Below are positions 48,335-63,160 of a DNA stretch of 64,000 nt, one piece after another. The notes beneath the pieces are model-generated. The model did no database searches. It was given only the letters and a program-made list of their open reading frames with translations, and was not told where the DNA came from. The stretch covers positions 186,001-250,000 of the IMG/VR virus record IMGVR_UViG_3300024503_000015, one strand, 5' to 3'. The translations under genes were made by a program, and so were the position numbers. Within the stretch, counting starts at the first letter, position 1, and each line of letters opens with the position of its first letter.

Positions 48335-48928
48335 TTATTCGTCTTCCCAGGGTACAGGAATCCAACCTAGTTTAAGTAAATCTGCTTCTATTTCTTCTGT
48401 AACAATGCCTTCGGGCACATATCCTGTACGCTTTTGCCATTGTTCATTAGTTTCTTTAGCATCGTACTCTTGATTAAGTCCGCCCATACCTGAACAGTAC
48501 CAATCAATGTAATCACCTTCTTGACGCATATCTGCAACAATGCCGCCAGCACTACGCCAACTAGCACTCCACAAATCTTTGTCAGGATCTTGTCGCAGAT
48601 AAGGAAACATTTCTTTACGAACAAAACGCATATTACACATAGCCGCATAAAGATTCTGTGCATAGGCATCGCTGTTACGAACCTTGGCTAGAATCCAATC
48701 TGTACTACGTAGGTCGTATTCTAAATTATTTTCCTGCCATTCGGGGTTAGACATGTTTTCTTCGTCTTGTTCACGAAAGGTTTTAAAAAGATTTAAGTAA
48801 TCTTCTCTAGGCTCTTTACCTTCTTCCGCACAACGTTCGATATATCCGTTTAATTGAAAACTATGACGCTCTGGGCTTGAGCTTATTTTAACGTTTGTAT
48901 CCGGTGAATCCGAGTTTTCTGTAGGCAT
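48335..48928 (-). CDS. Conserved hypothetical phage protein (start uncertain)
   Basis: LEYDLRST...YAQNLYAAMCN...SWRSAGGIVAD...DYIDWYCSG. Confidence 0.65.
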   Translation of the reverse strand: MPTENSDSPDTNVKISSSPERHSFQLNGYIERCAEEGKEPREDYLNLFKTFREQDEENMSNPEWQENNLEYDLRSTDWILAKVRNSDAYAQNLYAAMCNMRFVRKEMFPYLRQDPDKDLWSASWRSAGGIVADMRQEGDYIDWYCSGMGGLNQEYDAKETNEQWQKRTGYVPEGIVTEEIEADLLKLGWIPVPWEDE

Positions 48929-49421
48929 TACGCACTCCTATAGCCTGTCGTTTAGCATCTTCTAACGCATTGTGTTTTGCATCCTGCGGCATTTCAGGAT
49001 CTGCTAGTTCAAACAATGTACGTGTGTCACGCATTTCCCAGAAGTTCCAAGGATATGCACGACCTAATTTTTCGTAGATATTCTGCAAAATCATTAAGTC
49101 AAAAGTAGCACCGTGACTCCAAAAATGACTGCACCCCCATGCTAGTGCATGAAACTGATTAATAACTTCATGGATTGGAATACGATCCCTTGGATCAAAT
49201 GCTTCCTCCATGATGTTAGTATCCTGCTGATTCCACCATTTTAGTGTGTCGTCGCTTACAGTACAACCTAGAGCATCTTGGCTGTCTATCTCCACACGCA
49301 GATAAAGTTCTTTCATGGGTGCATTTGTAAACGGATCAAACCTTACTGCGCCCAAGGTAAGAATAGTTGCTGTAGTCTTTGTGTCAAGAGTTTCCAAGTC
49401 GACCATTAAGTGTTGTGCCAT
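48888..49421 (-). CDS. DEDD 3'-5' exonuclease (Rv2179c-like)
   Basis: MVDLETL, GATFDL, RDTRT and HNALEDA motifs. Confidence 0.85.
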   Translation of the reverse strand: MAQHLMVDLETLDTKTTATILTLGAVRFDPFTNAPMKELYLRVEIDSQDALGCTVSDDTLKWWNQQDTNIMEEAFDPRDRIPIHEVINQFHALAWGCSHFWSHGATFDLMILQNIYEKLGRAYPWNFWEMRDTRTLFELADPEMPQDAKHNALEDAKRQAIGVRNAYRKLGFTGYKR

Positions 49422-49424
49422 ATA

Positions 49425-49787
49425 TTATACCAGAATGAAAATGATTAAAAGATAACCTAGTTGATGAGCCATTTGATCTAGGCCTAAATGATTCCAAAAT
49501 TCCTTAGTAGTAATATCTCTATTACCCCAATTCATTTTAGCCCAGTCTATGTGGTAGTGCATTATAAAATCTAACGCACCCATAGCCAGTGCTACATTAA
49601 GATTGGCCACAGTTAGCACGACTACGGTTGTACCAAAGCCGTGTTTTAGACTGTGTTTAATGCCACGCCAGTCGAGATAAATTCCTTTATGCTTGACCTC
49701 TTCGTCACTTTGATTAACAAAGTCAATGTACCAATGCTTAACCTGAAGTAAAGCCAATAGAATGAGTGCAATAGTTAGATAGTCCAT
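49425..49787 (-). CDS. DUF3307-like membrane protein
   Basis: KHWYIDF...HSLKHG...HYHIDW...GLDQMAH conserved His/Asp pattern. Confidence 0.7.
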   Translation of the reverse strand: MDYLTIALILLALLQVKHWYIDFVNQSDEEVKHKGIYLDWRGIKHSLKHGFGTTVVVLTVANLNVALAMGALDFIMHYHIDWAKMNWGNRDITTKEFWNHLGLDQMAHQLGYLLIIFILV

Positions 49788-49825
49788 GCTTATGATTATA
49801 CTATCTTATTAATGTAAAGTCAAGT

Positions 49826-50011
49826 TTACTTCTTGGGTTTATCGTTCGATTCGTCCAAATCGTAGTATTCGTTTTTCATTATTGCTTCATCAAACTTTTC
49901 TGCATCTGTCTTTTTATTTTTTCGAAAAATGTTATCGTAATTATTACGATAGTTGTCAGTGACTCCTTTGGTTTGAATAGAGTCGCCTGTGATGTCGTTT
50001 CTTGCTACCAT
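49826..50011 (-). CDS. Hypothetical protein
   Basis: 61-aa ORF, ARNDITGD motif, GGAG SD. Confidence 0.6.
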   Translation of the reverse strand: MVARNDITGDSIQTKGVTDNYRNNYDNIFRKNKKTDAEKFDEAIMKNEYYDLDESNDKPKK

Positions 50012-50047
50012 ACCACACTCCTTAAAAGTATAGTTATCTGGAGAAGG

Positions 50048-50506
50048 TCAAGTTCTCCAGATTTCCTTAAAGCCTTCGTCTTCGGTTGGCATTTCAAAAG
50101 TATCAATCATGCTACGCATAACTGAATCTGGAATGTTCTTGCCTGGACGACTGGCTAAACGTCGATCCAATTCTTCCTTTTTAGGAGTTGGAAATACCAC
50201 AGCAATATGTTCATAGTTAGGCAACATATTGAACTTACGCTTACGGCTCTTAATCGAAACACTGGTCTGATCCCAGATGATATCTAAATTATTTGCCTTA
50301 CAAATTTCGACTTGGTTAGCCATCAACTTTACGGCAATAGGCATATATTCATCAAAAACTTCGTTGTAGGTTTTACCCATTTTTTCAGCGTATTCTTCCA
50401 CAAACTTATCTGTGCTAACCACAGGAATATCCTTAGCCCAGTCTTGATTCTTAATCCAAGTGCTCTTACCTGCACCTGGCACTCCGATTAATTGATAACA
50501 CTTCAT
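50048..50506 (-). CDS. Polynucleotide kinase-like P-loop protein (AAA_33)
   Basis: GVPGAGKST, IWDQT and R.ASRPGK.IP motifs. Confidence 0.8.
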   Translation of the reverse strand: MKCYQLIGVPGAGKSTWIKNQDWAKDIPVVSTDKFVEEYAEKMGKTYNEVFDEYMPIAVKLMANQVEICKANNLDIIWDQTSVSIKSRKRKFNMLPNYEHIAVVFPTPKKEELDRRLASRPGKNIPDSVMRSMIDTFEMPTEDEGFKEIWRT

Positions 50507-50736
50507 GGTTGAAAGTTGTCCCTTCCTTTTGTATGCTTACTGATTTCGGCTAAGGTTGCCCTTAGCATTTGAATTTCCATTGCGGCTTCTTCTAACAAGT
50601 TAGCAATCTTGTCGGGCTTACCTTCTGTGACTGCTAACCTGCCAGGAATCTGCCTACGTATCTCTGCTCGTTTATACAAGCGGAACACTAGGCTTTGCTC
50701 TGCTACAGGCAAATGACTTTCATCTTCACATCTCAT
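50503..50736 (-). CDS. Hypothetical protein
   Basis: Start refined to MRCEDES (ATGA overlap). Confidence 0.55.
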   Translation of the reverse strand: MRCEDESHLPVAEQSLVFRLYKRAEIRRQIPGRLAVTEGKPDKIANLLEEAAMEIQMLRATLAEISKHTKGRDNFQP

Positions 50737-51617
50737 ACTGTCTCCATATAGTTGCGTACCCAAGATAAACGAGCTTGCTCGTCCATAGCAGTATACTCCT
50801 CAATGTTAGCACGGATAGCATCCACTAGTGGATAGTATTCTTCGTCTAAATTGTGCTTGATGTCTTTGTTCAAGTCTACTAACTTGTCTGTGCGTGGATT
50901 GCGAGCAACCCACTTTGAAGTCAAGTAGTAAGGTGACTTGATCTTAGAACCAACGCCGTCCTTAGTATAGAATACAAAACCTTCGTGCTTAACAGTCTTT
51001 ACTAGAGCCTTTAACTCGCCTACTGTAGTAGTAAAGATATCCACAGGGAGGCATCCAAGATGCTTGCCCAAAGGTTCTAGCGTAAACTTTTCGTAGTATA
51101 ACTTACCGTTCCAGTCTTTGTGACGGAATCCGATAAAGTACAGTCCAGGTTCTTCAGGTATGATGTGTGGGTCAGTTGGATGAACGCACTCAAACATAAA
51201 AGTAAAATCTGGGGCACATCTTAGTACATCACGGAAGTTATCAGTGATATATTCCTTTGCCATATCGACAAACTCGCCTGAAGTAGAACCTGTTGTTGAA
51301 ACTAGGATATCTCCATTGTGCCAAGTCATAGCAACCATAAAGCCGTTAACTTTACGAAGTGCTGTGATCTCAGTATCGTCGGATAGCACTGGTGCTTCCT
51401 TTTCAATACCATAGTTATAGATCTTTGTGAATGGTCGTTGTACTACATTAAACTCAGAGTCTACAATAGTACCTCGACATTCGGCGATGTATTCGTTCCA
51501 CAAGTTATCGTAGAACACTTTCTTCTTGTACTTTAGCACATAGATACCATCGCCACATTCTTTCATGTTGACTAGGTTACTAGTGTTTACATACTCCTTC
51601 AATTCATCTTTAAACAT
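50733..51617 (-). CDS. RNA ligase (T4 Rnl1-like)
   Basis: ECRG, PFTKIYN, motif I RKVNGF, FE, HEGFV and KIKSPYY. Confidence 0.85.
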   Translation of the reverse strand: MFKDELKEYVNTSNLVNMKECGDGIYVLKYKKKVFYDNLWNEYIAECRGTIVDSEFNVVQRPFTKIYNYGIEKEAPVLSDDTEITALRKVNGFMVAMTWHNGDILVSTTGSTSGEFVDMAKEYITDNFRDVLRCAPDFTFMFECVHPTDPHIIPEEPGLYFIGFRHKDWNGKLYYEKFTLEPLGKHLGCLPVDIFTTTVGELKALVKTVKHEGFVFYTKDGVGSKIKSPYYLTSKWVARNPRTDKLVDLNKDIKHNLDEEYYPLVDAIRANIEEYTAMDEQARLSWVRNYMETV

Positions 51618-52158
51618 GATGACCCTTAATTTCGTTGTTTTTAATTCTGCCAATCGCATATTCCATTGACACAACAATCTCACCGGTTGAATCCATACCT
51701 ACATCGAATGCACGATACTTTTCTAATCCACTAACACCTCCGTGTAAGTGACCATGAAAATGTAATGCTCCTCTGTGCATTTGATCCCACTCAGCAATCG
51801 GATAGTGAAACATGACAATCTTGTGACCATCATATGTAATATCCAAATACTCGTGTACTTCTGCAAACGCACCACGGAACGTTTCGTCCATCAATGTCTT
51901 ACGGTCATGATTTCCTCTAATTAAAATCTTTGTGCCATTCAAACGCTTTACCATTCTACCAGCATCACTACCTGACATGAACGCTACATCGCCTAAGATG
52001 TAGACTGTGTCTTCAGGTTTGACTTTATGGTTCCATTCTTCGGCCATGGCGTTGTTCATATATGCAACGTCGTCTTTAAATCGTGCTCTCGTCACTGGAC
52101 AGAACTTCATGATGTTCTTATGTCCAAAGTGTAAGTCGCTTGTAATCCATGTTTTCAT
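51610..52158 (-). CDS. Metallophosphoesterase
   Basis: SDLHFGH, LGD, GNHD, HYP and HGHLH motifs; promoter at 52183-52211. Confidence 0.9.
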   Translation of the reverse strand: MKTWITSDLHFGHKNIMKFCPVTRARFKDDVAYMNNAMAEEWNHKVKPEDTVYILGDVAFMSGSDAGRMVKRLNGTKILIRGNHDRKTLMDETFRGAFAEVHEYLDITYDGHKIVMFHYPIAEWDQMHRGALHFHGHLHGGVSGLEKYRAFDVGMDSTGEIVVSMEYAIGRIKNNEIKGHHV

Positions 52159-52182
52159 TTTTTCGCTCTTCTTTCTTGTTAT

Positions 52183-52211
52183 ATTATACAGCCAAAAGAA
52201 CGCCCTGTCAA
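52183..52211 (-). promoter_or_regulatory. sigma70-type promoter of the phosphoesterase-ligase-kinase operon
   Basis: Perfect TTGACA-17 nt-TATAAT. Confidence 0.75.
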
Positions 52212-52238
52212 CTCTCGAAGACAGGGCAAATGTTGTTT

Positions 52239-52706
52239 TTATACAACGGGCTTGTATGTGCGCCAATCGTCGATGTTGGGCTTTTCGTCCGCATCGTAGG
52301 TCCAACCCAAGGCTCGCATCATTCTGTGCTTAACGAGCAGATTAGGGCTTCTAAACCGCCCTGTATCCTGAAAGCCCAGCATTACGCCTACTTCGCATAC
52401 AGCACCGCTACGACAAATTCCAGCAAAACAATGAACAACAACGTTCATTTTGTTATCCAAAGCGTGTTGTAAAAGAGCCACAAGTTGATTGGCTTGTTCT
52501 TGACTACACTTCATTGCTTCGTCGTCTACGTGGTCGTTTTCCTCCACGTCCAAAAATTCAAAGTTATGAATTTCCTTGAACTTATGGGCAGGAGTAGGAC
52601 GCCAGCTCGCCGGGTCAACGATACTAATCAGCATACTATTTTCGCCTGCTTCGTGATGAAATCTTTTTGGGATATCATCGGCGGCTACATTTTCAATCCA
52701 AGGCAT
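52239..52706 (-). CDS. Cys-dependent (CX5R) phosphatase
   Basis: VVVHCFAGICRS active-site loop. Confidence 0.82.
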   Translation of the reverse strand: MPWIENVAADDIPKRFHHEAGENSMLISIVDPASWRPTPAHKFKEIHNFEFLDVEENDHVDDEAMKCSQEQANQLVALLQHALDNKMNVVVHCFAGICRSGAVCEVGVMLGFQDTGRFRSPNLLVKHRMMRALGWTYDADEKPNIDDWRTYKPVV

Positions 52707-53797: not shown

Positions 53798-53807
53798 GGA
53801 GGGAATT

Positions 53808-53915
53808 TGGTGTGACCGGGAGGGTTCGAACCTCCAAGGACGGCATATCGCCTAGTCCCGACCCACGGAGTGTTTCACAACAGTCCTGGAGCTCTGCCTA
53901 TTCGCTCACGGTCAC
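53808..53915 (-). ncRNA. tRNA-like RNA with expanded anticodon arm (108 nt)
   Basis: Perfect 7-bp acceptor stem, ACCA, D-arm and T-arm; ~41-nt branched insert instead of an anticodon loop; no variable loop. Confidence 0.7.
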
Positions 53916-55113: not shown

Positions 55114-55120
55114 ATAACTT

Positions 55121-55249
55121 TATAGGTGCTCTCTGTTCGACTCGAACGAAACCTGCTGAGCTCCTTATCTTCCTGGCACTTTCGGTGGGTAGTCGACTTA
55201 GCACCTAACTCGTGTTATCCAGTGTAGTTCAGCTCAGAGAGCATTTATA
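55121..55249 (-). ncRNA. Candidate tRNA-like structured RNA (~130 nt)
   Basis: TGCTCTCTG/CAGAGAGCA stem; T-loop TTCGAGT just before the 3' strand; no CCA. Confidence 0.45.
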
Positions 55250-57692: not shown

Positions 57693-58572
57693 TGCTAACG
57701 CTGAGATTATACGTTAGCCAATAGTGCCTCTAGCATTATAGTCAGCCTTGCGAGCCAACCTTCTCTAGACATCCACATAAGCCATTACTGTACCTATGTC
57801 CACTATCAGCATCGCCGTTTTTAAAGACAGGCAGTAGTCTTGTCGCCATATGCTATTCTACGCTATCTACTCCGTTGACCTTGCGAGCCATTCAGCGGCG
57901 CTAACCACTTACGAAACTTCCAGCATAAACAGATTTCACCTTGCGAGCTACGTCTGACTCGATTACCTTGCGGCTCGAGTATTAGATGCTTTTCACATAT
58001 GACCGAGGCAGTCTTTGCATTTTATAATCGATAGTTGGGATCGAACCAACAGTCCATTGCTTAAGAGGCAATTGCGTTACCATTACGCTATATCAAACCT
58101 ACCGCGATGAGCTGCCTCTGTTGCTCAATAACCTTTTGGATTACTGAATACAACTCACCACATACCTTTTGTCTCGCGGACTACTCAGTGATATTTCACG
58201 ATCAATGTCCTGCATCAAAACAGTCCACTAACCATTAATATTGCATACAAGCCCTTAGGAGCGACCCCTTGGACAAATACACTACCCTTTCTCATACCAA
58301 TTCGCAAGTTGGTTTTGTTAGGAAGTCAGCACCACCCGTTACTTTTCATGCACCCTGGTTCCCTTGCGGGCCAGTCGATACACATTCTTTCCCTAACACT
58401 TGCTTCATTGTTACATCCACCGGTCTTCTCAGTGAACGCTACCTCGCGGTAGTGAGCAGGCTTGTTTACATGAACCATTACTGGCGGAGTTGCGTAGGCT
58501 TACCTCCTTTGGGTTGATCACTCAACTTATTCTTCGTCAACGGCGAACCGCCAACAGGATAATAAACTACCC
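57692..58572 (-). ncRNA. GOLLD-like giant ornate RNA (~880 nt)
   Basis: No credible ORF; five C(GCAA)G, three GCGA and one UUCG tetraloops on the minus strand; embedded tRNA; located in a tRNA array. Confidence 0.65.
58027..58097 (-). tRNA. tRNA-Lys(CTT)-like module embedded in the giant RNA (no CCA)
   Basis: GCGT/ACGC D-stem; ATTGC-CT CTT AA-GCAAT; GTTGG-TTCGATC-CCAAC; 6-bp acceptor stem; enclosed by GAGGCAG/CTGCCTC. Confidence 0.75.
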
Positions 58573-58582
58573 TTAAATTTTT

Positions 58583-59149: not shown

Positions 59150-59195
59150 TTGTTTTACTTGTATAATTCGTTGTAGATAGAATCTGCTACAAATG

Positions 59196-59273
59196 TGGTA
59201 CCCCTGCTCCGATTCGAACGGAGAGAACTTCTCCTTTTGAGAGAGACGACTTTACCAATTTGTCCACAGGGGT
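59196..59273 (-). tRNA. tRNA-Leu(CAA), short variable loop
   Basis: TCTCT-CT CAA AA-GGAGA; 6-nt variable region; CCA. Confidence 0.85.
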
Positions 59274-59278
59274 ATATC

Positions 59279-59352
59279 TGGTGCTCAAGGAAAGAATCGA
59301 ACTTTCGATTGTGTCGTACCAAGACACTGGTATACCATTTACCTACAAGAGC
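59279..59352 (-). tRNA. tRNA-Thr(GGT)
   Basis: Cloverleaf with two U-U mismatches in the acceptor stem; CCA. Confidence 0.8.
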
Positions 59353-59354
59353 CT

Positions 59355-59426
59355 TGGCGCCTCTGAGTAGATTCGAACTACTATAACCTGGTTTAGAAGA
59401 CCTGGCACTGCTCCATCAGCAGAGGC
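59355..59426 (-). tRNA. tRNA-Arg(TCT), degenerate D-arm
   Basis: CAGGT-CT TCT AA-ACCAG (4 of 5 bp); perfect acceptor and T-arm; CCA. Confidence 0.65.
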
Positions 59427-59427
59427 A

Positions 59428-59504
59428 TGGTACCCTTGGTTGGATTCGAACCTACACACAACGGATTTTAAATCCATTCGCATTACCAATTAGCGTACAA
59501 GGGC
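59428..59504 (-). tRNA. tRNA-Leu(TAA), short variable loop
   Basis: ATGGA-TT TAA AA-TCCGT; 5-nt variable region; CCA. Confidence 0.85.
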
Positions 59505-59511
59505 ATAATTA

Positions 59512-59587
59512 TGGTGCCGCCCCTTGGGATCGAACCAAGTTCCTCGGTGCTTCAAACCGGTGCAATGACCACATTTGCTAAAGCGGC
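59512..59587 (-). tRNA. tRNA-Phe(GAA)
   Basis: Cloverleaf; CCA. Confidence 0.9.
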
Positions 59588-59593
59588 GATATT

Positions 59594-59668
59594 TGGGGTG
59601 AAGCCGGGAATCGAACCCTGCCTTACTGTTTCACAGACAGCCGTGCGGACCACTACACTAGCAACACC
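59594..59668 (-). tRNA. tRNA-His(GTG)
   Basis: G-1:C73; anticodon GTG; imperfect acceptor and T-stem. Confidence 0.8.
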
Positions 59669-59670
59669 AT

Positions 59671-59747
59671 TGGCCGGCCCTGAGAGACTCGAACTCCCAA
59701 CCTCCAGTTTCGAAGACTGGCACTCTAATCCATTGAGTTAAGGACCG
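59671..59747 (-). tRNA. tRNA-Arg(TCG)
   Basis: CCAGT-CT TCG AA-ACTGG; CCA. Confidence 0.88.
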
Positions 59748-59754
59748 TTAAAAT

Positions 59755-59828
59755 TGGCAGGCCTACCAGGACTCGAACCTGGAACGACTGAGTCAAAGTC
59801 AGTTGTGTTACCATTACACCATAGGCCA
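59755..59828 (-). tRNA. tRNA-Gln(TTG)
   Basis: Unpaired 1-72; G73; CT TTG AC; CCA. Confidence 0.9.
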
Positions 59829-59838
59829 ACAGATTGAA

Positions 59839-60051
59839 TTTGTAAGTAGTTGCCCCATCGTTATAGCAACCATTCACCCATGTATATAAAGCCGGCTGGG
59901 ACTCGGTACGTCACTTGGGATACTAGTCCAGTTAGCAACCAATCTGCAGGGATCTTCCGATCCCCCGGGAGTTGAACCCGTCCCCTTTTACTATTAAGGT
60001 AGTTCGAACTTACCTACAATAGCGTGACATTCTCTTGCTGACACTTACAAA
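59839..60051 (-). ncRNA. YrlA/Y-RNA-like RNA with a circularly permuted tRNA domain
   Basis: Order T-arm (CGGG-TTCAACT-CCCG), 7-bp acceptor-like hairpin capped by GGAA, D-like arm with TGG, all inside a long terminal stem (TTTGTAAGT/ACTTACAAA). Confidence 0.6.
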
Positions 60052-60054
60052 ACT

Positions 60055-60129
60055 TGGTGCCCCAGGATGGAATCGAACCACCACACCCTGCTTACAAAAC
60101 AGGACCTCTACCACTAAGGATACAAGGGC
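60055..60129 (-). tRNA. tRNA-Thr(TGT)
   Basis: Cloverleaf; CCA. Confidence 0.9.
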
Positions 60130-60134
60130 AAAAT

Positions 60135-60212
60135 TGGTCTCCACGGTACGATTCGAACGTACAGCCTCCTGACTCCAGATCAGGCCGTCTACCAGATTGA
60201 CATTACGCAGAG
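60135..60212 (-). tRNA. Non-canonical tRNA-Pro(TGG)
   Basis: C1-G72, A73; anticodon loop TC TGG AG (C33, A37); CCA. Confidence 0.65.
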
Positions 60213-60222
60213 ATAAAAATAA

Positions 60223-60298
60223 TTGCGACCGAAGGACTCGAACCTTCGCGGTAATCTAGAATGCCCCGGCAAGGCCGGTTAACCCACCATTGTCGCAA
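60223..60298 (-). ncRNA. tRNA-like remnant without CCA or a normal anticodon arm
   Basis: TTGCGAC/GTCGCAA stem; GAAGG-TTCGAGT-CCTTC T-arm; CCGGC-CTT-GCCGG hairpin. Confidence 0.5.
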
Positions 60299-60301
60299 AT
60301 T

Positions 60302-60376
60302 TGGTGGAGGCCGAGGAAATCGAATCCTTCTAGACATCTTCCTTGCAAGGGAAGACCGTAGCCCACTACTGCCCCC
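60302..60376 (-). tRNA. tRNA-Ala(TGC), minimal D-arm
   Basis: G3-U70; CT TGC AA; D-arm GTAG-TGGG-CTAC; CCA. Confidence 0.8.
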
Positions 60377-60380
60377 AAAT

Positions 60381-60416
60381 TGGTGTTAGTTTCTATACCA
60401 CCCATTGAAACTAACA
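60381..60416 (-). ncRNA. CCA-terminated minihelix candidate
   Basis: TGTTAGTTTC-13 nt-GAAACTAACA-CCA. Confidence 0.35.
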
Positions 60417-60461
60417 AACATTGAGAGAACATGGATGAACCCACAAGATCTCTATTTGCTC

Positions 60462-60536
60462 TGGTATAGCGTACGGGGATCGAACCCGCCTAGTCACCTT
60501 GAAAGGGTGATGACCTCCCCAGAAGTCGAACGCTAT
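60462..60536 (-). tRNA. tRNA-Glu(TTC), second divergent copy
   Basis: TCACC-CT TTC AA-GGTGA; CCA. Confidence 0.82.
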
Positions 60537-60542
60537 GTAAAT

Positions 60543-60616
60543 TGGTTCCTGGACCGAGAATTGAACTCAGAATGACCGGTTATCAGCCGATTGTTATACC
60601 ATTTAACTATCCAGGA
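60543..60616 (-). tRNA. tRNA-Ile(GAT)
   Basis: Cloverleaf; CCA. Confidence 0.92.
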
Positions 60617-60625
60617 ATAATACTA

Positions 60626-60701
60626 TACAAAAAGAAACTAACGACAATGCGCTATGCACCCAGAGTCTATAGTTCCTGGCTGTGGTTAGTTTGTTTTTAT
60701 A
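60626..60701 (-). ncRNA. Candidate small stem-closed RNA
   Basis: 17-position terminal stem with one C-C mismatch; inner CCAGG/TCTGG and GC-ATA-GC hairpins. Confidence 0.35.
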
Positions 60702-60703
60702 CA

Positions 60704-60804
60704 CTACCATATGGAAGCACTCTTATGCCTTTTTCGTCATAAGATGGTGGCCCGTCCTTACTACTGACGCTATGCGACCAGTTAAGAATGCTTTCATATG
60801 GTAG
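60704..60804 (-). ncRNA. Stem-closed RNA whose 5' strand includes the CTACCA end of tRNA-Lys(TTT)
   Basis: 22-position stem with one A-C mismatch and one G-U pair. Confidence 0.45.
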
Positions 60805-60873
60805 GGGCACAGAGAATCGAACTCTGATTTACGGGTTAAAAGCCCGCTACTTTAACCATTAAGTTATACCCCC
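60799..60873 (-). tRNA. tRNA-Lys(TTT)
   Basis: Cloverleaf; CCA. Confidence 0.92.
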
Positions 60874-60876
60874 ATA

Positions 60877-60952
60877 TGGTCCCTGCTGTGAGATTCGAAC
60901 TCACACCTCATTGATTAAGAGTCAAGTGCGCTACCATTGACGCTAAACAGGG
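60877..60952 (-). tRNA. tRNA-Lys(CTT)
   Basis: Cloverleaf; CCA. Confidence 0.9.
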
Positions 60953-61014
60953 TTGTACGTATTGATTTGATTTTACGTGCCAACCCTAGACCATACGGGA
61001 GATCTAGAGTGACA

Positions 61015-61035
61015 CTAACGTTTAGCACGTTTCAT
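61015..61035 (-). CDS. Micro-ORF MKRAKR ending in TAG, followed by a long hairpin
   Basis: AAGGAGAG SD 4 nt before ATG; ATG AAA CGT GCT AAA CGT TAG. Confidence 0.5.
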   Translation of the reverse strand: MKRAKR

Positions 61036-61047
61036 GCTACTCTCCTT

Positions 61048-61110
61048 TTAATATTTTTTCAAAACTTGATACAACACGAACATTATAACTAACACTACAA
61101 GTACTGCCAT
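61048..61110 (-). CDS. 20-aa hydrophobic peptide
   Basis: AAGGAGA SD; MAVLVVLVIMFVLYQVLKKY. Confidence 0.55.
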   Translation of the reverse strand: MAVLVVLVIMFVLYQVLKKY

Positions 61111-61123
61111 AATATTCTCCTTA

Positions 61124-61213
61124 TGGTCCCCCGTTGAGGAATCGAACCTCATCCTGGACCTTATCTAGATTAATCGGTTATAAGCCGACCTGCTCTCCAT
61201 GAGCTAACGGGGG
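61124..61213 (-). tRNA. tRNA-Ile(TAT) with enlarged variable region
   Basis: GTCGG-CT TAT AA-CCGAT; 21-nt variable region; perfect acceptor and T-arm; CCA. Confidence 0.75.
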
Positions 61214-61466: not shown

Positions 61467-61579
61467 TACCTTTTTACACATTCTAGTTATCGCCTAGAAC
61501 TTACCATCCGGTAGGCCGCCCACATTAAGCCCATGTTTTACGTGCAGGCAGGGTCGCGTTCCCTATAACACGTTTGAGA

Positions 61580-61750
61580 TTAGTCTTGCTCTACGAGCTC
61601 AACTTCTCTCTTGTAAAGTGCTGTGTGATAAGCACGAGCACGATTAAACTTTTCTTCGATGAGTTTTTCAAAAGCATCGTCGTCCAGTTCATGCTCACTT
61701 AGCACTTTGGCACTTTTCTGTTTTCTAAAATCTTCAAAATTCATTTTCAT
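61580..61750 (-). CDS. 56-aa charged helical protein, first gene after the attenuator
   Basis: Hand translation MKMNFEDFRKQKSAKVLSEHELDDDAFEKLIEEKFNRARAYHTALYKREVELVEQD. Confidence 0.6.
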   Translation of the reverse strand: MKMNFEDFRKQKSAKVLSEHELDDDAFEKLIEEKFNRARAYHTALYKREVELVEQD

Positions 61751-61763
61751 TTCCAAATCTTAC

Positions 61764-61800
61764 AAAACAAAAAACCCTGGGTTTTTAGTCCAGGGTTCTT
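61764..61800 (-). terminator. Intrinsic terminator (attenuator) upstream of the tRNA array
   Basis: AAGAACCCTGG-ACTAAAAAC-CCAGGGTTTTT followed by TGTTTT. Confidence 0.85.
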
Positions 61801-61852
61801 AAAAGTTATTGTGTATGTTACTGTTAACTTACACGATCCTCCAAGAACCCTA
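61791..61852 (-). promoter_or_regulatory. Antiterminator hairpin mutually exclusive with the terminator
   Basis: TAGGGTTCTTGGAGG pairs at all 15 positions (including G-U) with CTTTTAAGAACCCTG; inner GTGTA.GTTA/TAAC.TACAC hairpin covers the leader stop codon. Confidence 0.75.
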
Positions 61853-61985
61853 CGATAATCTCAGGTGTACGATCATTACCTAGACCTAGCCCGACATTAC
61901 TAAACTGTGACCAATAGGCGGACATACATGCCGGCGCTTTGGCTTGTTTAGATATCGTTTGTCTATGTAAACTAATCGTTTGCAT
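61824..61985 (-). CDS. 53-aa leader peptide containing all 20 amino acids
   Basis: Hand translation MQTISLHRQTISKQAKAPACMSAYWSQFSNVGLGLGNDRTPEIIVGFLEDRVS; its last codons form the antiterminator. Confidence 0.7.
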   Translation of the reverse strand: MQTISLHRQTISKQAKAPACMSAYWSQFSNVGLGLGNDRTPEIIVGFLEDRVS

Positions 61986-62043
61986 TTTGTTTCTCTTTTT
62001 CTTACCTTCTTAAAAGTTGTAGCGGAATTGCTACTGTCTTTGT

Positions 62044-62072
62044 ATTGTAATGCCTTTCAACATCTTTGTCAA
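62044..62072 (-). promoter_or_regulatory. sigma70-type promoter P2 of the tRNA operon
   Basis: TTGACA-17 nt-TACAAT. Confidence 0.7.
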
Positions 62073-62136
62073 CATCTTTTTGTCTTTTTTGGACAACCTA
62101 ATGTTTTGTGGAAAGTGATTGCTTTACAATATTTGT

Positions 62137-62165
62137 ATTATATGAGTATTTATAAAACTTGTCAA
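62137..62165 (-). promoter_or_regulatory. sigma70-type promoter P1 with an embedded TATAAATA late motif
   Basis: TTGACA-AGTTTTATAAATACTCA-TATAAT. Confidence 0.75.
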
Positions 62166-62222
62166 TACCTATGTTGAAATGTGGCGATTTTGCAACATTT
62201 TGAAAACCGCCACACTTTTGTA

Positions 62223-62741
62223 TTAACCGTTTAGTACTTTTGCTAGACTATTGATCACTGCGGCAATACGTCCGATGTCACGAAGTTGTTCTACGGTGTA
62301 GCCTTCCTTCTTCAATGTTTCGTAGTGCGCCTTAACACAGAAATGACACTTGCCAACAATACTTGCGGCAAGACTGTATGCTTCAAAGCGAGCCTTGGTA
62401 GTTCCGCCATGGCTTGCGATAGCGTTCATGCGTAACTGTGCTGGCAAGCCCTTTAGTTGCTCATCGTCTGCCATCTCAACATATGGATACCAAACGTTGT
62501 TCTGTGCCATAATTGAACCAGCGGTCATCGCGGCATCACGTTCTTTTTCGTCTGTGATGTTGCTCATGATGAAACTAATCAATTTTCCATTGCCGGTGCT
62601 CATAGCCGCGGCCAATGCACAACCTTCTGCTTCTACAACATCTGATAGTGTACTACGCTTGATTACTGCATCCAGATTTAGTTTTGTGTCCTTGGCGTAT
62701 TCTGGTAAACCTTCTTTTAATTGATCAACCCATTGTGTCAT
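62223..62741 (-). CDS. ahpD: Alkylhydroperoxidase reductase AhpD
   Basis: LPEYAKDTKLNL, MAQNNVWY and SIVGKCHFCVKAH (CxxC); downstream of ahpC. Confidence 0.9.
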   Translation of the reverse strand: MTQWVDQLKEGLPEYAKDTKLNLDAVIKRSTLSDVVEAEGCALAAAMSTGNGKLISFIMSNITDEKERDAAMTAGSIMAQNNVWYPYVEMADDEQLKGLPAQLRMNAIASHGGTTKARFEAYSLAASIVGKCHFCVKAHYETLKKEGYTVEQLRDIGRIAAVINSLAKVLNG

Positions 62742-63160
62742 AGTGTGTCTCCTTTAGTTGCTTTGGCTATGCTTTTATAGCCTTTGTAAGTTGGGTGTAC
62801 GTGATCCGGGCTAGTTTCGTGCTTTCTAGCATCTATTACAAAGTCCTTGTATTTTTCTGCTACTGCAAGAACTGCCCGTCTCTTATCGTCCTTGATATTA
62901 GGTACAATCCAATAAACACGAGTGGCGTCTACTAGTTGTCTTAGACTGTCTAGTTCCTCCACTGTGTTTATTTTTGCTGTATCGTTTGACCCTAGACTAA
63001 TGATTACATTTTTTGCCTGTGTAGTGCCCTGAGTGTGTAACACATGACGATTAACATAGTCATAACTGTTAATGCCACTCTTAGCACGAGTAACACATTC
63101 TGTACGAACTTGTCCTACTCCTACTGCTAGGCTATCGCCTAGGATTAAACAATCAAGCAT
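62738..63160 (-). CDS. SGNH/GDSL hydrolase
   Basis: ILGDSL, SLGSND and DHVHP blocks. Confidence 0.85.
   Translation of the reverse strand: MLDCLILGDSLAVGVGQVRTECVTRAKSGINSYDYVNRHVLHTQGTTQAKNVIISLGSNDTAKINTVEELDSLRQLVDATRVYWIVPNIKDDKRRAVLAVAEKYKDFVIDARKHETSPDHVHPTYKGYKSIAKATKGDTL

What the first reader, a model, noticed from the sequence alone, without database searches (positions are those of the whole stretch)
59839..60051. Y-RNA (YrlA)-like circularly permuted tRNA mimic
Seen: within a ~210-nt terminal-stem RNA, the order is T-arm (CGGG-TTCAACT-CCCG), then a 7-bp acceptor-like helix closed by a GGAA tetraloop, then a D-like arm (CAG...TGG...CTG). This is the permuted arrangement described for bacterial YrlA RNAs, which bind Ro60/Rsr. 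An extra hairpin with GTTCGAAC and large insertions make it longer than typical. No Ro60 gene is in this window. Inference: a phage Y RNA acting with a Ro60 encoded elsewhere or by the host, alongside the adjacent RNA-repair genes.
Basis: partly seen in the sequence, partly recalled or inferred. Interest (0 to 1): 0.68.

Follow-up and report, generated by a model that had tools for sequence, protein, structure and literature searches.

The report
Phage RNA shaped like permuted tRNA
A large freshwater phage carries, inside its block of tRNA genes, a well-conserved and abundantly transcribed 218-base RNA whose core folds like a tRNA with its parts in rotated order; it belongs to a new family, not the known Ro-binding YrlA RNAs, and it probably pairs with copies of itself.

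Summary
On the minus strand, between tRNA-Thr and tRNA-Gln, lies a ~218-nt RNA (60052-59835) closed by a terminal stem. Its core is a circularly permuted tRNA cloverleaf: T arm, then a 7-bp acceptor-like hairpin capped by GGAA, then a D arm.

Over 190 copies occur in freshwater phage and metagenome contigs. Covariation supports every core helix: 98.7% of cells are paired, 24 of 33 pairs changed on both sides, and 0 of 500 shuffles did as well. In four river metatranscriptomes its contig depth is mostly above the neighbouring tRNAs, up to about 100-fold.

It fails every testable YrlA criterion:
- no Rfam match, even at E<=10;
- no GNCGAA(N)G Ro motif;
- no Ro60 gene in 47 phage records, four of them complete;
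- about twice the size of YrlA.

It has extra parts: a long hairpin with an invariant UUCGAA loop, and a 3' domain whose loop carries a covarying 6-10-nt palindrome. Such a palindrome can only pair between molecules. One RNA contig joins its two ends head to tail, so it may be circular.

Best reading: a new family of stable, self-associating tRNA-mimic RNAs of phage tRNA islands. Its partner is unknown.

The parts
59835..60052 (-). Whole RNA (218 nt). The ends are taken from the head-to-tail joint in an RNA-library contig. Sequence conservation also fades at these points.
   Evidence: alignments
60043..60051 (-). P1 terminal stem, 5' strand (UUUGUAAGU)
   Evidence: Pairs with 59839-59847. 96.8% of cells are paired and 8 of 9 pairs changed on both sides.
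59839..59847 (-). P1 terminal stem, 3' strand (ACUUACAAA), followed by the conserved overhang UUCA
60039..60042 (-). P2, 5' strand GUCA. It pairs with UGAC at 59910-59913.
   Evidence: C-G changes to U-A in 6 distinct sequences, and U-A changes to C-G or A-U. 100% of cells are paired (helix 1).
59910..59913 (-). P2, 3' strand UGAC
   Evidence: helix 1
60029..60038 (-). Conserved joining strand GCAAGAGAAU (GCAAG is invariant). With 59914-59925 (UAGUAUCCCAAG) it forms a large conserved internal loop.
60026..60028 (-). Helix I, 5' strand GUC. It pairs with GAC at 59926-59928.
   Evidence: U-A 71, A-U 10, plus C-G, G-C, G-U and U-G (helix 2)
59990..60023 (-). P3 long hairpin with an invariant UUCGAA loop. 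It sits where the long variable arm of a class II tRNA sits.
   Evidence: 9 of 10 pairs changed on both sides (helices 3-4). The loop is UUCGAA in 84 of 84 distinct sequences, and no search pattern required it.
59966..59980 (-). T arm CGGG-UUCAACU-CCCG, with a canonical T-loop
   Evidence: Closing pair C-G 55, U-A 29, A-U 2, G-C 2. This is the only part that matches Rfam tRNA-like models.
59948..59965 (-). Acceptor-like 7-bp hairpin capped by a GGAA tetraloop, stacked directly on the T arm
   Evidence: 5 of 7 pairs changed on both sides (helix 7). The same compensatory variants appear in RNA contigs (table 3).
59935..59947 (-). D arm GCA-GAUUGGU-UGC. The loop always contains GG.
   Evidence: (helix 8)
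59930..59931 (-). Helix III, 3' strand (CU of the invariant CUGG). It pairs with GG at 59984-59985 and closes the four-way cloverleaf in place of the anticodon stem.
   Evidence: 100% of cells are paired, but changes occur on one side only (helix 5). The flanking pair N81-N132 covaries (C-G, U-A, U-G) in minority types and is G.A in the majority. This is the weakest helix.
59877..59900 (-). P5 hairpin of the 3' domain
   Evidence: Pairs 166-185 (C-G 48, U-A 39) and 167-184 (G-C 63, A-U 22, U-A 6)
59890..59897 (-). Palindrome AGCCGGCU at the 5' side of the P5 loop; proposed symmetric kissing site
59849..59870 (-). P6 hairpin with a conserved 10-12-nt loop (UAUAACGAUGGG)
   Evidence: 99.3% of cells are paired and 3 of 5 pairs changed on both sides
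60055..60129 (-). Upstream tRNA-Thr(UGU). Its encoded CCA lies 2 nt from the RNA's 5' end.
59755..59828 (-). Downstream tRNA-Gln(UUG), 6 nt after the RNA's 3' end

Best explanation
This is one member of a previously undescribed family of phage non-coding RNAs that live inside tRNA gene arrays ('tRNA islands') of large freshwater phages.

**How it is made.** It is transcribed with the tRNAs on the minus strand and cut out of the precursor. The 5' end lies at AG|UUUU, 2 nt after the CCA of the upstream tRNA. The 3' end lies 4 nt past the terminal stem. It then accumulates as a stable 218-nt RNA.

**What it looks like.** Its core is a four-way junction that copies a tRNA cloverleaf in rotated order. 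It has a T arm with a canonical T-loop, an acceptor-like stem sealed by a GGAA tetraloop, a D arm with the invariant GG, and a short helix in place of the anticodon stem. It has no anticodon and no free CCA end, so it cannot be charged or decode.

**How it most likely works (inferred).** It presents a tRNA 'elbow' to a protein or RNA that recognises tRNA shape, and titrates or recruits that partner. The extra 3' domain joins two or more copies through a self-complementary loop. The terminal stem holds the ends together, so they may be sealed into a circle.

It works in the manner of a tRNA mimic such as YrlA, but it is not a YrlA and shows no sign of depending on Ro60.
For: **Shown: context.** The RNA lies in a 31-tRNA minus-strand array that also holds GOLLD.

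**Shown: a real, widespread family.**
- The family has 194 matches in 140 distinct contexts, from IMG/VR and freshwater or river metagenomes.
- There is one copy in each of 4 complete 235-367-kb genomes, 0.1-1.8 kb from GOLLD in the 3 that have GOLLD.
- The flanks differ between loci. 18 different tRNA identities occur upstream and 17 downstream, so it is a discrete module.

**Shown: structure.**
- On 88 distinct sequences 98.7% of cells are paired, against 84.6% in shuffles. 24 of 33 pairs changed on both sides, and 0 of 500 shuffles did as well.
- P1, P5 and P6 are supported likewise.
- The T-loop is UUCAACU or UUCGACU, all D loops contain GG, and the P3 loop UUCGAA is invariant.

**Shown: palindrome.**
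- Loop positions 168-173 covary as a palindrome. The pair counts are 168-173 CG38 GC37 UA8 AU1, 169-172 CG69 UA20, and 170-171 (adjacent bases) CG88.
- A palindrome of 6 nt or more is present in 96% of sequences, against 40% of shuffled loops.
- Pairing of adjacent bases is impossible within one chain. The same argument was used to support the kissing loops seen by cryo-EM in GOLLD and OLE.

**Shown: expression.** In four river metatranscriptomes the two bins holding the element have contig depth 113-1517 in three runs and 10-33 in the fourth. The four tRNA bins just downstream (59167-59757) have 4-57, the four bins from 60349 to 61136 have 0-22, and the coding bins (61531-62900) have 0-36 (table 2). 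RNA contigs carry the same compensatory acceptor-stem variants seen in DNA (table 3).

**Lead only.** One RNA contig (depth 131, 44 nt on the shorter side) joins 60052 to 59835 (table 5). No such tandem arrangement exists in the DNA loci held.
Against: - No partner is identified and nothing here tests binding.
- The elbow (T-loop/D-loop contact) is inferred from invariant residues, not shown.
- Helix III has only 2-3 bp and no change on both sides.
- Homologues were gathered with sequence patterns. Part of the invariance is therefore by construction: GCAGATTGG, and CAGCAAG, the T arm and GGAAG.
- RNA evidence comes from assembled contigs, which give neither strand nor true ends nor level. Depths sum related phages, and one of the four runs shows no excess over the flanks.
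- The head-to-tail joint rests on one contig in one run. The tool reports the letters between its two sides as 'not known'.
- Single-sequence folding energy is unremarkable (z = -1.1).
Confidence: 0.55

Rival explanations
1. It is a true, very divergent Y RNA. The tRNA-like module and the basal stem bind a host-encoded Ro60/Rsr and tether it to an effector, as YrlA is thought to do, possibly in concert with the phage RNA-repair enzymes.
For: - It has the same module order as YrlA: T arm, capped stem-loop, D arm between paired 5' and 3' ends (the Rfam consensus; PMC4201824).
- A conserved single-stranded GUCAGCAAG sits in the 5' strand, where YrlA has its Ro motif.
- An RnlA-like ligase, a Pnkp-like kinase and a phosphoesterase lie 7.5-10 kb away. 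This echoes the rsr-yrlBA-rtcBA operon of Salmonella (own knowledge).
- Chen et al. state that more divergent Y RNAs remain to be found.
Against: - No YrlA model match at E<=10.
- GNCGAAN0-1G is absent from 113 of 114 members.
- No TROVE gene in 47 phage records, 4 of them complete, nor in 3 MAGs. Published phage YrlAs lie next to a phage Ro60.
- It is twice the size of known Y RNAs and has an extra domain.
- The ligase is present in only 2 of 4 complete relatives.
Confidence: 0.12
2. It is an RNA-only architectural particle of the GOLLD/ROOL/OLE kind. Its two self-complementary loops (the variable P5 palindrome and the invariant UUCGAA of P3) and the invariant GGAA cap build a defined homo-oligomer. 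The tRNA likeness then serves assembly or cargo (tRNA) handling, not protein decoy action.
For: - Palindromic covariation of the same kind supports the kissing loops seen by cryo-EM in GOLLD and OLE.
- UUCGAA is itself a palindrome and is invariant.
- The GNRA-type cap is conserved while its stem covaries.
- It occupies the same genomic niche as GOLLD and ROOL, and 10 of 16 larger records hold both RNAs.
- RNA abundance is high.
Against: - It is only 218 nt, against roughly 580 to over 800 nt for the known cage-forming RNAs.
- A predicted 6-bp UUCGAA duplex is weak (-4.1 kcal/mol), and a 6-nt loop cannot pair fully.
- No structural data exist.
- Dimerisation alone does not exclude a protein partner.
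Confidence: 0.2
3. It has no function in trans. It is a cis-acting processing or 'punctuation' element, or a decayed and rearranged tRNA gene, that merely helps the tRNA array transcript to be cut or stabilised.
For: It lies between tRNAs, with a same-strand tRNA within 25-30 nt in 65-73% of loci. The array also holds several odd tRNA-like genes.
Against: - About 140 positions are under strong structural constraint, and long invariant single-stranded blocks and loops span many phage lineages.
- The RNA outlasts its flanks in most RNA libraries.
- There is exactly one copy per genome regardless of the number of tRNAs.
- Some members are not flanked by tRNAs and have a long terminal stem of their own.
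Confidence: 0.08
4. It is chiefly a substrate or regulator of the phage RNA-repair system. The terminal stem presents a nicked loop that the RnlA-like ligase seals, giving an exonuclease-proof circular tRNA mimic.
For: - A head-to-tail joint lies exactly at the stem ends.
- The 5' site AG|UUUU fits the RNase E preference, which would leave 5'-P/3'-OH ends that suit an ATP-dependent ligase (inference, own knowledge).
- The RnlA-like ligase gene is at 50733-51683.
Against: - It rests on one contig in one run, with the letters between its sides 'not known'.
- The ligase is absent from 2 of 4 complete genomes that carry the RNA.
- No RtcB occurs in any of them.
Confidence: 0.1

Closest known systems
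YrlA (bacterial Y RNA-like, Rfam RF02553; Chen et al. 2014, PMC4201824; structure preprint 10.1101/312249)
   Same: Its 5' and 3' ends are paired in a basal stem. It has a permuted tRNA-like module in the order T arm, capped acceptor-like stem-loop, D arm. It has a canonical T-loop and a D-loop GG, no anticodon and no free CCA. Some YrlAs are phage-encoded.
   Different: - No covariance-model match.
- No GNCGAA(N)G Ro motif.
- No adjacent or genome-wide Ro60 gene.
- 218 nt against 80-130 nt.
- An extra variable-arm-like hairpin, two further helices (P2, helix I) around a large conserved internal loop, and a 70-nt 3' domain with a palindromic loop.
- Embedded in a tRNA array, not beside rsr.
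Canonical tRNA, especially class II (long variable arm)
   Same: It is a four-way junction with the T arm stacked on the acceptor stem with no linker. It has a 3-4-bp D stem with GG in the loop, and a long hairpin at the place of the variable arm. It is co-transcribed with tRNAs.
   Different: The strand order is rotated, the acceptor end is closed by GGAA, and there is no anticodon loop. It is not found by ARAGORN or the Rfam tRNA model.
GOLLD / ROOL / OLE ornate RNAs (bioRxiv 10.1101/2024.12.08.627333)
   Same: GOLLD and ROOL are phage-encoded and lie near tRNA islands, and this RNA sits 1.7 kb from a GOLLD RNA in this window. It is abundant and of unknown function. Its loop palindrome covaries in the way that marks intermolecular kissing loops in GOLLD and OLE.
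   Different: It is much smaller, shares no sequence or model similarity, contains a complete tRNA-like cloverleaf, and has no shown multimer state.
Two-piece (circularly permuted) tmRNA genes
   Same: The gene order places the T arm and 3' acceptor strand before the 5' acceptor strand.
   Different: The acceptor is sealed by a 4-nt loop, with no CCA and no excised spacer. There is no tag reading frame. ARAGORN finds no tmRNA, and only the 15-nt T arm aligns to the tmRNA model.
Stable 'species 1 and 2' RNAs (rnaC, rnaD) of the phage T4 tRNA cluster (own knowledge, not tested here)
   Same: They are small stable RNAs of unknown function, encoded among phage tRNA genes and released by tRNA-precursor processing.
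   Different: No sequence relation was tested, and they are not known to have a permuted cloverleaf or a palindromic loop.

Membership tests
YrlA / bacterial Y RNA | Scores at or above the gathering threshold (69 bits) of Rfam RF02553 | tested here: not met
   No match on the element at E<=10 in 781-nt and 226-nt searches. The 19.5- and 24.8-bit hits lie on the tRNA-Arg/tRNA-Gln junction.
YrlA / bacterial Y RNA | Encoded next to, or in the same genome as, a Ro60/Rsr (TROVE) gene | tested here: not met
   PF05731 is absent from the 270-kb record, from 46 related viral records including 4 complete genomes, and from 3 MAGs. Controls were positive in Deinococcus and Bacteroides. The host genome is unknown.
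YrlA / bacterial Y RNA | Ro-contact motif GNCGAAN0-1G near the 5' end (PMC4201824) | tested here: not met
   Absent from 113 of 114 distinct family members. The one match lies in the 3' domain.
YrlA / bacterial Y RNA | tRNA-like module with T arm, capped acceptor-like stem and D arm in that order, between paired termini | tested here: met
   Covariation in all three arms and in the terminal stem; loop sequences.
YrlA / bacterial Y RNA | Length 80-130 nt | tested here: not met
   218 nt between the joint-defined ends, and ~213 nt between the stem ends. A ~110-nt relative exists in other phages.
YrlA / bacterial Y RNA | Physically bound by Ro60/Rsr; carries tRNA modifications | not testable with these tools
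   Needs co-immunoprecipitation and modification mapping.
tRNA | Anticodon arm, and free 5'/3' acceptor ends with CCA | tested here: not met
   ARAGORN and Rfam tRNA give no call on 59829-60054. The acceptor is closed by GGAA, and a 2-3-bp helix replaces the anticodon arm.
tmRNA (one- or two-piece) | tRNA-like domain with a CCA end plus a tag reading frame and pseudoknots | tested here: not met
   ARAGORN finds no tmRNA. Only 15 nt of the T arm align, at 9 bits.
Self-assembling ornate phage RNAs (GOLLD/ROOL/OLE kind) | Symmetric intermolecular kissing loop marked by palindromic covariation | tested here: met
   Pairs 168-173, 169-172 and the adjacent 170-171 stay complementary through 4, 2 and 2 Watson-Crick pair types. 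At least 10 distinct palindromes occur at the same loop site. The criterion is as stated.
Self-assembling ornate phage RNAs (GOLLD/ROOL/OLE kind) | Defined homo-oligomer observed in solution or by cryo-EM | not testable with these tools
   No RNA 3D or oligomer tool was available.
Self-assembling ornate phage RNAs (GOLLD/ROOL/OLE kind) | Match to the GOLLD, ROOL or OLE covariance models | tested here: not met
   No such hit on the element. GOLLD itself is a separate gene at 57698-58161.

The most novel reading that the evidence does not exclude
A DNA-encoded tRNA mimic is cut out of a phage tRNA precursor, and its ends are sealed into a 218-nt circle. It then assembles through two self-complementary loops into a defined RNA-only oligomer that displays several tRNA elbows. 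This would be a new class of phage 'tRNA-island' RNA particle, a small counterpart of GOLLD and ROOL, used to trap or organise a tRNA-binding host factor.
Probability: 0.15. Interest if true: 0.9.

Novelty: new variant of a known kind. Interest (0 to 1): 0.72.

Why it matters
- Phage tRNA islands are now known to hold large RNAs of unknown function (GOLLD, ROOL). This adds a third, compact and very well-defined family, abundant in freshwater viromes and metatranscriptomes.
- It shows that the permuted-tRNA design known from Ro-associated YrlA has been used, or reinvented, in a setting without Ro60. The design may therefore serve a more general purpose: presenting a tRNA elbow without an anticodon or a chargeable end.
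- The palindromic loop gives a direct, cheap test for RNA-RNA assembly.
- The possible circular form would be a rare case of a gene-encoded circular RNA in a bacterial virus.
- At 218 nt it is small enough for structure determination and for genetics in any cultured relative.

Tried and rejected
- **blastn against phage isolates.** A search of the element against 50,697 phage records found nothing. The family is therefore unknown in cultured phages at roughly 65-70% identity or more.
- **RNAalifold consensus.** It paired GUCAC (60028-60024) with GUGAC, and UUGG with CCAA. Both were rejected. Variants with AA at the first two positions keep AC in GUGAC but change the partner at 59927-59926. The true partner of UGAC is the other GUCA copy at 60042-60039.
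Rejected.
- **A K-turn or loop-E reading** of the GAGU/UGAAU internal loop below P5. Dropped, because one subfamily replaces it with UUGA/AAAAU.
- **All-against-all column covariation.** Swamped by subfamily structure. It was replaced by observed-minus-expected pairing and by hand inspection.
- **Six-frame Pfam searches** for RtcB, RNA_lig_T4_1 and RNA_ligase. They found nothing in this genome. The ligase was found only by PHROGs and NCBIfam on the ORF. It has no PDB relative by sequence.
- **The element's palindrome in GOLLD.** It does not recur there, so a specific GOLLD-element duplex is not supported.
- **A published catalogue of IMG/VR candidate RNAs (PMC10690425).** It has no held supplement, so I could not check whether this motif is listed there anonymously.
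- **Host identification.** It failed. The nearest cultured relatives are Pseudomonas jumbo phages (PA5oct group), at 49% clamp-loader identity.
- **Tools not needed and limits kept.** The large protein searches, structure prediction and complex prediction were not needed.

Full report
**Where it lies.** The window is part of a 270-kb IMG/VR phage record estimated 71% complete. From about 53.7 to 61.4 kb the minus strand carries 31 tRNA genes and a GOLLD RNA with an embedded tRNA-Lys. The finding occupies the 226-nt gap between tRNA-Thr(UGU) at 60055-60129 and tRNA-Gln(UUG) at 59755-59828. No ORF of 70 aa or more crosses the gap.

**A real family.**
- A 31-nt core is identical in 8 other viral contigs.
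- In all there are 194 matches in 140 distinct contexts.
- Same-strand tRNAs lie within 25-30 nt in 65% (upstream) and 73% (downstream) of contexts. They have 18 and 17 different identities, so the element is a self-contained module that moves within tRNA arrays.
- Each of four complete 235-367-kb genomes has exactly one copy, 0.1-1.8 kb from GOLLD in the three that have GOLLD.
- Nothing similar occurs in 50,697 phage isolate records.

**Structure.** I number from the 235-nt extract, where position p equals window coordinate 60064 minus p. Hand analysis of 114 distinct sequences and a covariance-model alignment (model R1, alignment A3) give these parts:
- P1, 13-21 with 217-225.
- P2, GUCA 22-25 with UGAC 151-154.
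- A large conserved internal loop, GCAAGAGAAU opposite UAGUAUCCCAAG.
- Helix I, 36-38 with 136-138.
- A three-way junction that carries the long hairpin P3 (41-74, loop UUCGAA).
- Helix III, 79-80 with 133-134.
- Inside helix III, the T arm (84-98), the acceptor-like hairpin (99-116, cap GGAA) and the D arm (117-129).

The formal count on 88 distinct sequences gave 98.7% of cells paired. Shuffles gave 84.6% and slid registers 20-44%. 24 of 33 pairs changed on both sides, and 0 of 500 shuffles reached any measure. P1, P5 (164-167 with 184-187) and P6 (194-198 with 211-215) are supported in the same way.

Two earlier models were discarded. Helix III is the weakest element, being short and varying on one side only.

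**How tRNA-like is it?** Read from helix III, the order is: variable-loop-like linker (3-4 nt), T arm, acceptor stem with no linker, D arm with 0-2 nt, 2-4-nt linker, helix III. That is a tRNA cloverleaf rotated so that the anticodon stem is the entry point.
- The T-loop is UUCAACU or UUCGACU.
- All eleven D-loop variants keep GG.
- The cap is GGAA in 83 of the 84 distinct aligned sequences. L046, cut off by its contig end and left out of that set, has a longer, differently capped stem.
- P3 sits where class II tRNAs have their long variable arm. Its invariant UUCGAA loop was never part of a search pattern.
- There is no anticodon loop and no free end, and tRNA and tmRNA finders ignore it.

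**Is it a YrlA?** The topology is the same as the Rfam YrlA consensus and as Chen et al. describe. Every other testable criterion fails:
- No model match at E<=10.
- The Ro-contact motif is absent from 113 of 114 members.
- No TROVE gene in 47 phage records, 4 of them complete, nor in 3 MAGs.
- It is about twice the size.

So it may work like a YrlA, but it should not be filed as one. The host is unknown, because the nearest isolates are Pseudomonas jumbo phages at 49% identity. A host Ro60 therefore remains possible.

**The 3' domain and self-pairing.** The P5 loop begins with a 6-10-nt palindrome whose sequence changes while its symmetry is kept. Examples are GCCGGC, CCCGGG, CUCGAG, GUCGAC, UCCGGA, ACCGGU and CGGCCG.
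- Pair 168-173 shows four Watson-Crick types.
- Pair 169-172 shows C-G or U-A.
- Pair 170-171 consists of neighbouring bases.

Such pairs cannot form within one chain. The same reasoning was used to support the kissing loops seen by cryo-EM in GOLLD and OLE. The predicted 8-bp duplexes are worth -14 to -18 kcal/mol. I infer a symmetric kissing dimer. The palindromic UUCGAA of P3 could add a second contact, but that is speculative.

**Expression and ends.** Contigs of four river metatranscriptomes cover the element.
- The two element bins have depth 113-1517 in three runs and 10-33 in the fourth.
- The four tRNA bins just downstream (59167-59757) have 4-57, the four bins from 60349 to 61136 have 0-22, and the coding bins have 0-36.
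- GOLLD has 1,700-32,500.
- Contigs also carry compensatory acceptor-stem variants.
- One contig in run X19 (depth 131, 44 nt on the shorter side) goes from 60052 back to 59835.

The joined points are U12, 2 nt after the upstream CCA at AG|UUUU, and A229, 4 nt past P1. This is just where conservation fades. No head-to-tail arrangement occurs in the DNA loci held. The joint suggests a circular form, or at least it marks the mature ends. But it is a single contig, and the tool does not know whether letters lie between the two sides. I rate a true circle at about one in three. Contigs cannot give strand, level or termini, so these points need raw reads.

**RNA-repair genes.** A distant RnlA-family ligase lies at 50733-51683 (phrog_562 at 3e-50; TIGR02308 at 8e-8). 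A Pnkp-like kinase lies at 50048-50506 and a metallophosphoesterase at 51610-52305. A DSP-type phosphatase lies at 52239-52706 and an Rv2179c-like 3'-5' exoribonuclease at 48888-49421. All lie 7.5-11 kb downstream on the same strand. The ligase occurs in only 2 of 4 complete genomes that carry the RNA, and no RtcB occurs in any. The link is therefore not obligatory.

**Mechanism.**
- Shown: a conserved, structured, transcribed RNA with a permuted tRNA cloverleaf and a covarying palindromic loop.
- Inferred: release by the tRNA-processing machinery, since the 5' site fits the RNase E preference (own knowledge).
- Inferred: a folded elbow, action by shape mimicry on a tRNA-recognising partner, dimerisation, and possible end-sealing.

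Rivals are listed with their odds. The Ro60 reading is the weakest of the trans-acting ones.

**Novelty and caveats.** It is not in Rfam 15 and not in the literature I could search. It may sit unnamed among 8,495 IMG/VR candidates of PMC10690425.

Homologues were found by patterns, so some invariance is by construction, and more distant members are surely missed. A shorter ~110-nt relative with the same layout (P1, P2-like AACA/UGUU, GCAAA, short hairpin, T arm, GAAA-capped stem, D arm) occurs in ten other viral contigs, two of which (the contigs of L023 and L177) also hold the long form. It also has no Rfam match. This suggests a wider superfamily of permuted tRNA mimics in phage tRNA islands.

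Noticed in passing
window 57698-58575 (-): A GOLLD RNA (207 bits over 57698-58161) has tRNA-Lys(CUU) embedded at 58025-58098. RNA-library contigs reach depth 1,700-32,500 from about 57788 up to about 58575, so the transcript is about 880 nt. Two runs hold a contig that skips 58024-58095, the embedded tRNA. Other contigs carry a different tRNA-like sequence (a GGAATCGAACC T arm) at the same point. This is either strain variation or removal of the tRNA from the RNA.
   Followed up: partly
window 60130-60461 (-): The 332-nt gap upstream of tRNA-Thr holds tRNA-like genes that ARAGORN misses. One at 60139-60211 is a 31.6-bit Rfam tRNA with a UGG-like anticodon loop. A second at 60226-60300 has a T arm and 5-bp acceptor ends. 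A third at about 60303-60385 looks like tRNA-Ala(UGC), with G3:U70, a 4-nt D loop and an encoded CCA. In two RNA runs this stretch is also deep (141-208).
   Followed up: partly
L023:165-276 (+), L177:5339-5450 (-), L210-L217: A ~110-nt short relative of the element lies in tRNA arrays of ten other viral contigs, two of which also hold the long form. It has a terminal stem, AACAGCAAA, a short hairpin, the T arm GCGG-UUCGACU-CCGC, a 4-bp stem capped by GAAA, and the D arm GUG-UAACGGUAG-CAC. It is YrlA-sized but has no Rfam match.
   Followed up: partly
L115:7578-7716 (-) and L115:9203-9338 (-): One metagenome contig carries two diverged copies of the long form 1.6 kb apart. One is flanked by tRNAs. 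The other has a ~20-bp extended terminal stem, a T-loop UUCGAUG and a different D loop. Members with the long stem (also L012, L018, L045) may be processed differently, for example by RNase III.
   Followed up: no
window 48888-52706 (-): A cassette of RNA-end-healing and sealing genes: an Rv2179c-like 3'-5' exoribonuclease, a Pnkp-like P-loop kinase, a distant T4 RnlA-family ligase, a metallophosphoesterase and a DSP-type phosphatase. It is probably a tRNA-repair system against host anticodon nucleases. The ligase was missed by six-frame Pfam searches.
   Followed up: partly
window 61571-61864: Two metatranscriptome runs each hold a contig (depth 40-51) that skips 292 nt (ends GT..CA) in the ORF-poor stretch between the tRNA array and the next genes. 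This is either a strain deletion or an excised segment such as an intron.
   Followed up: no
window 53798-53880 and 55114-55200 (-): More T-arm-like sequences lie outside called tRNAs. GGAGGTTCGAACCCTCC followed by ...CACCA lies near 53831, and GTTTCGTTCGAGTCGAAC near 55147. These may be further unrecognised tRNAs or tRNA-like RNAs in the array.
   Followed up: no
window 59694-59806 (-): The Rfam YrlA model gives weak hits (19.5-24.8 bits) across the junction of two adjacent ordinary tRNAs: the T arm of tRNA-Gln, the two acceptor strands, and the D arm of tRNA-Arg. Tightly packed tRNA arrays are a systematic source of false YrlA-like matches.
   Followed up: yes
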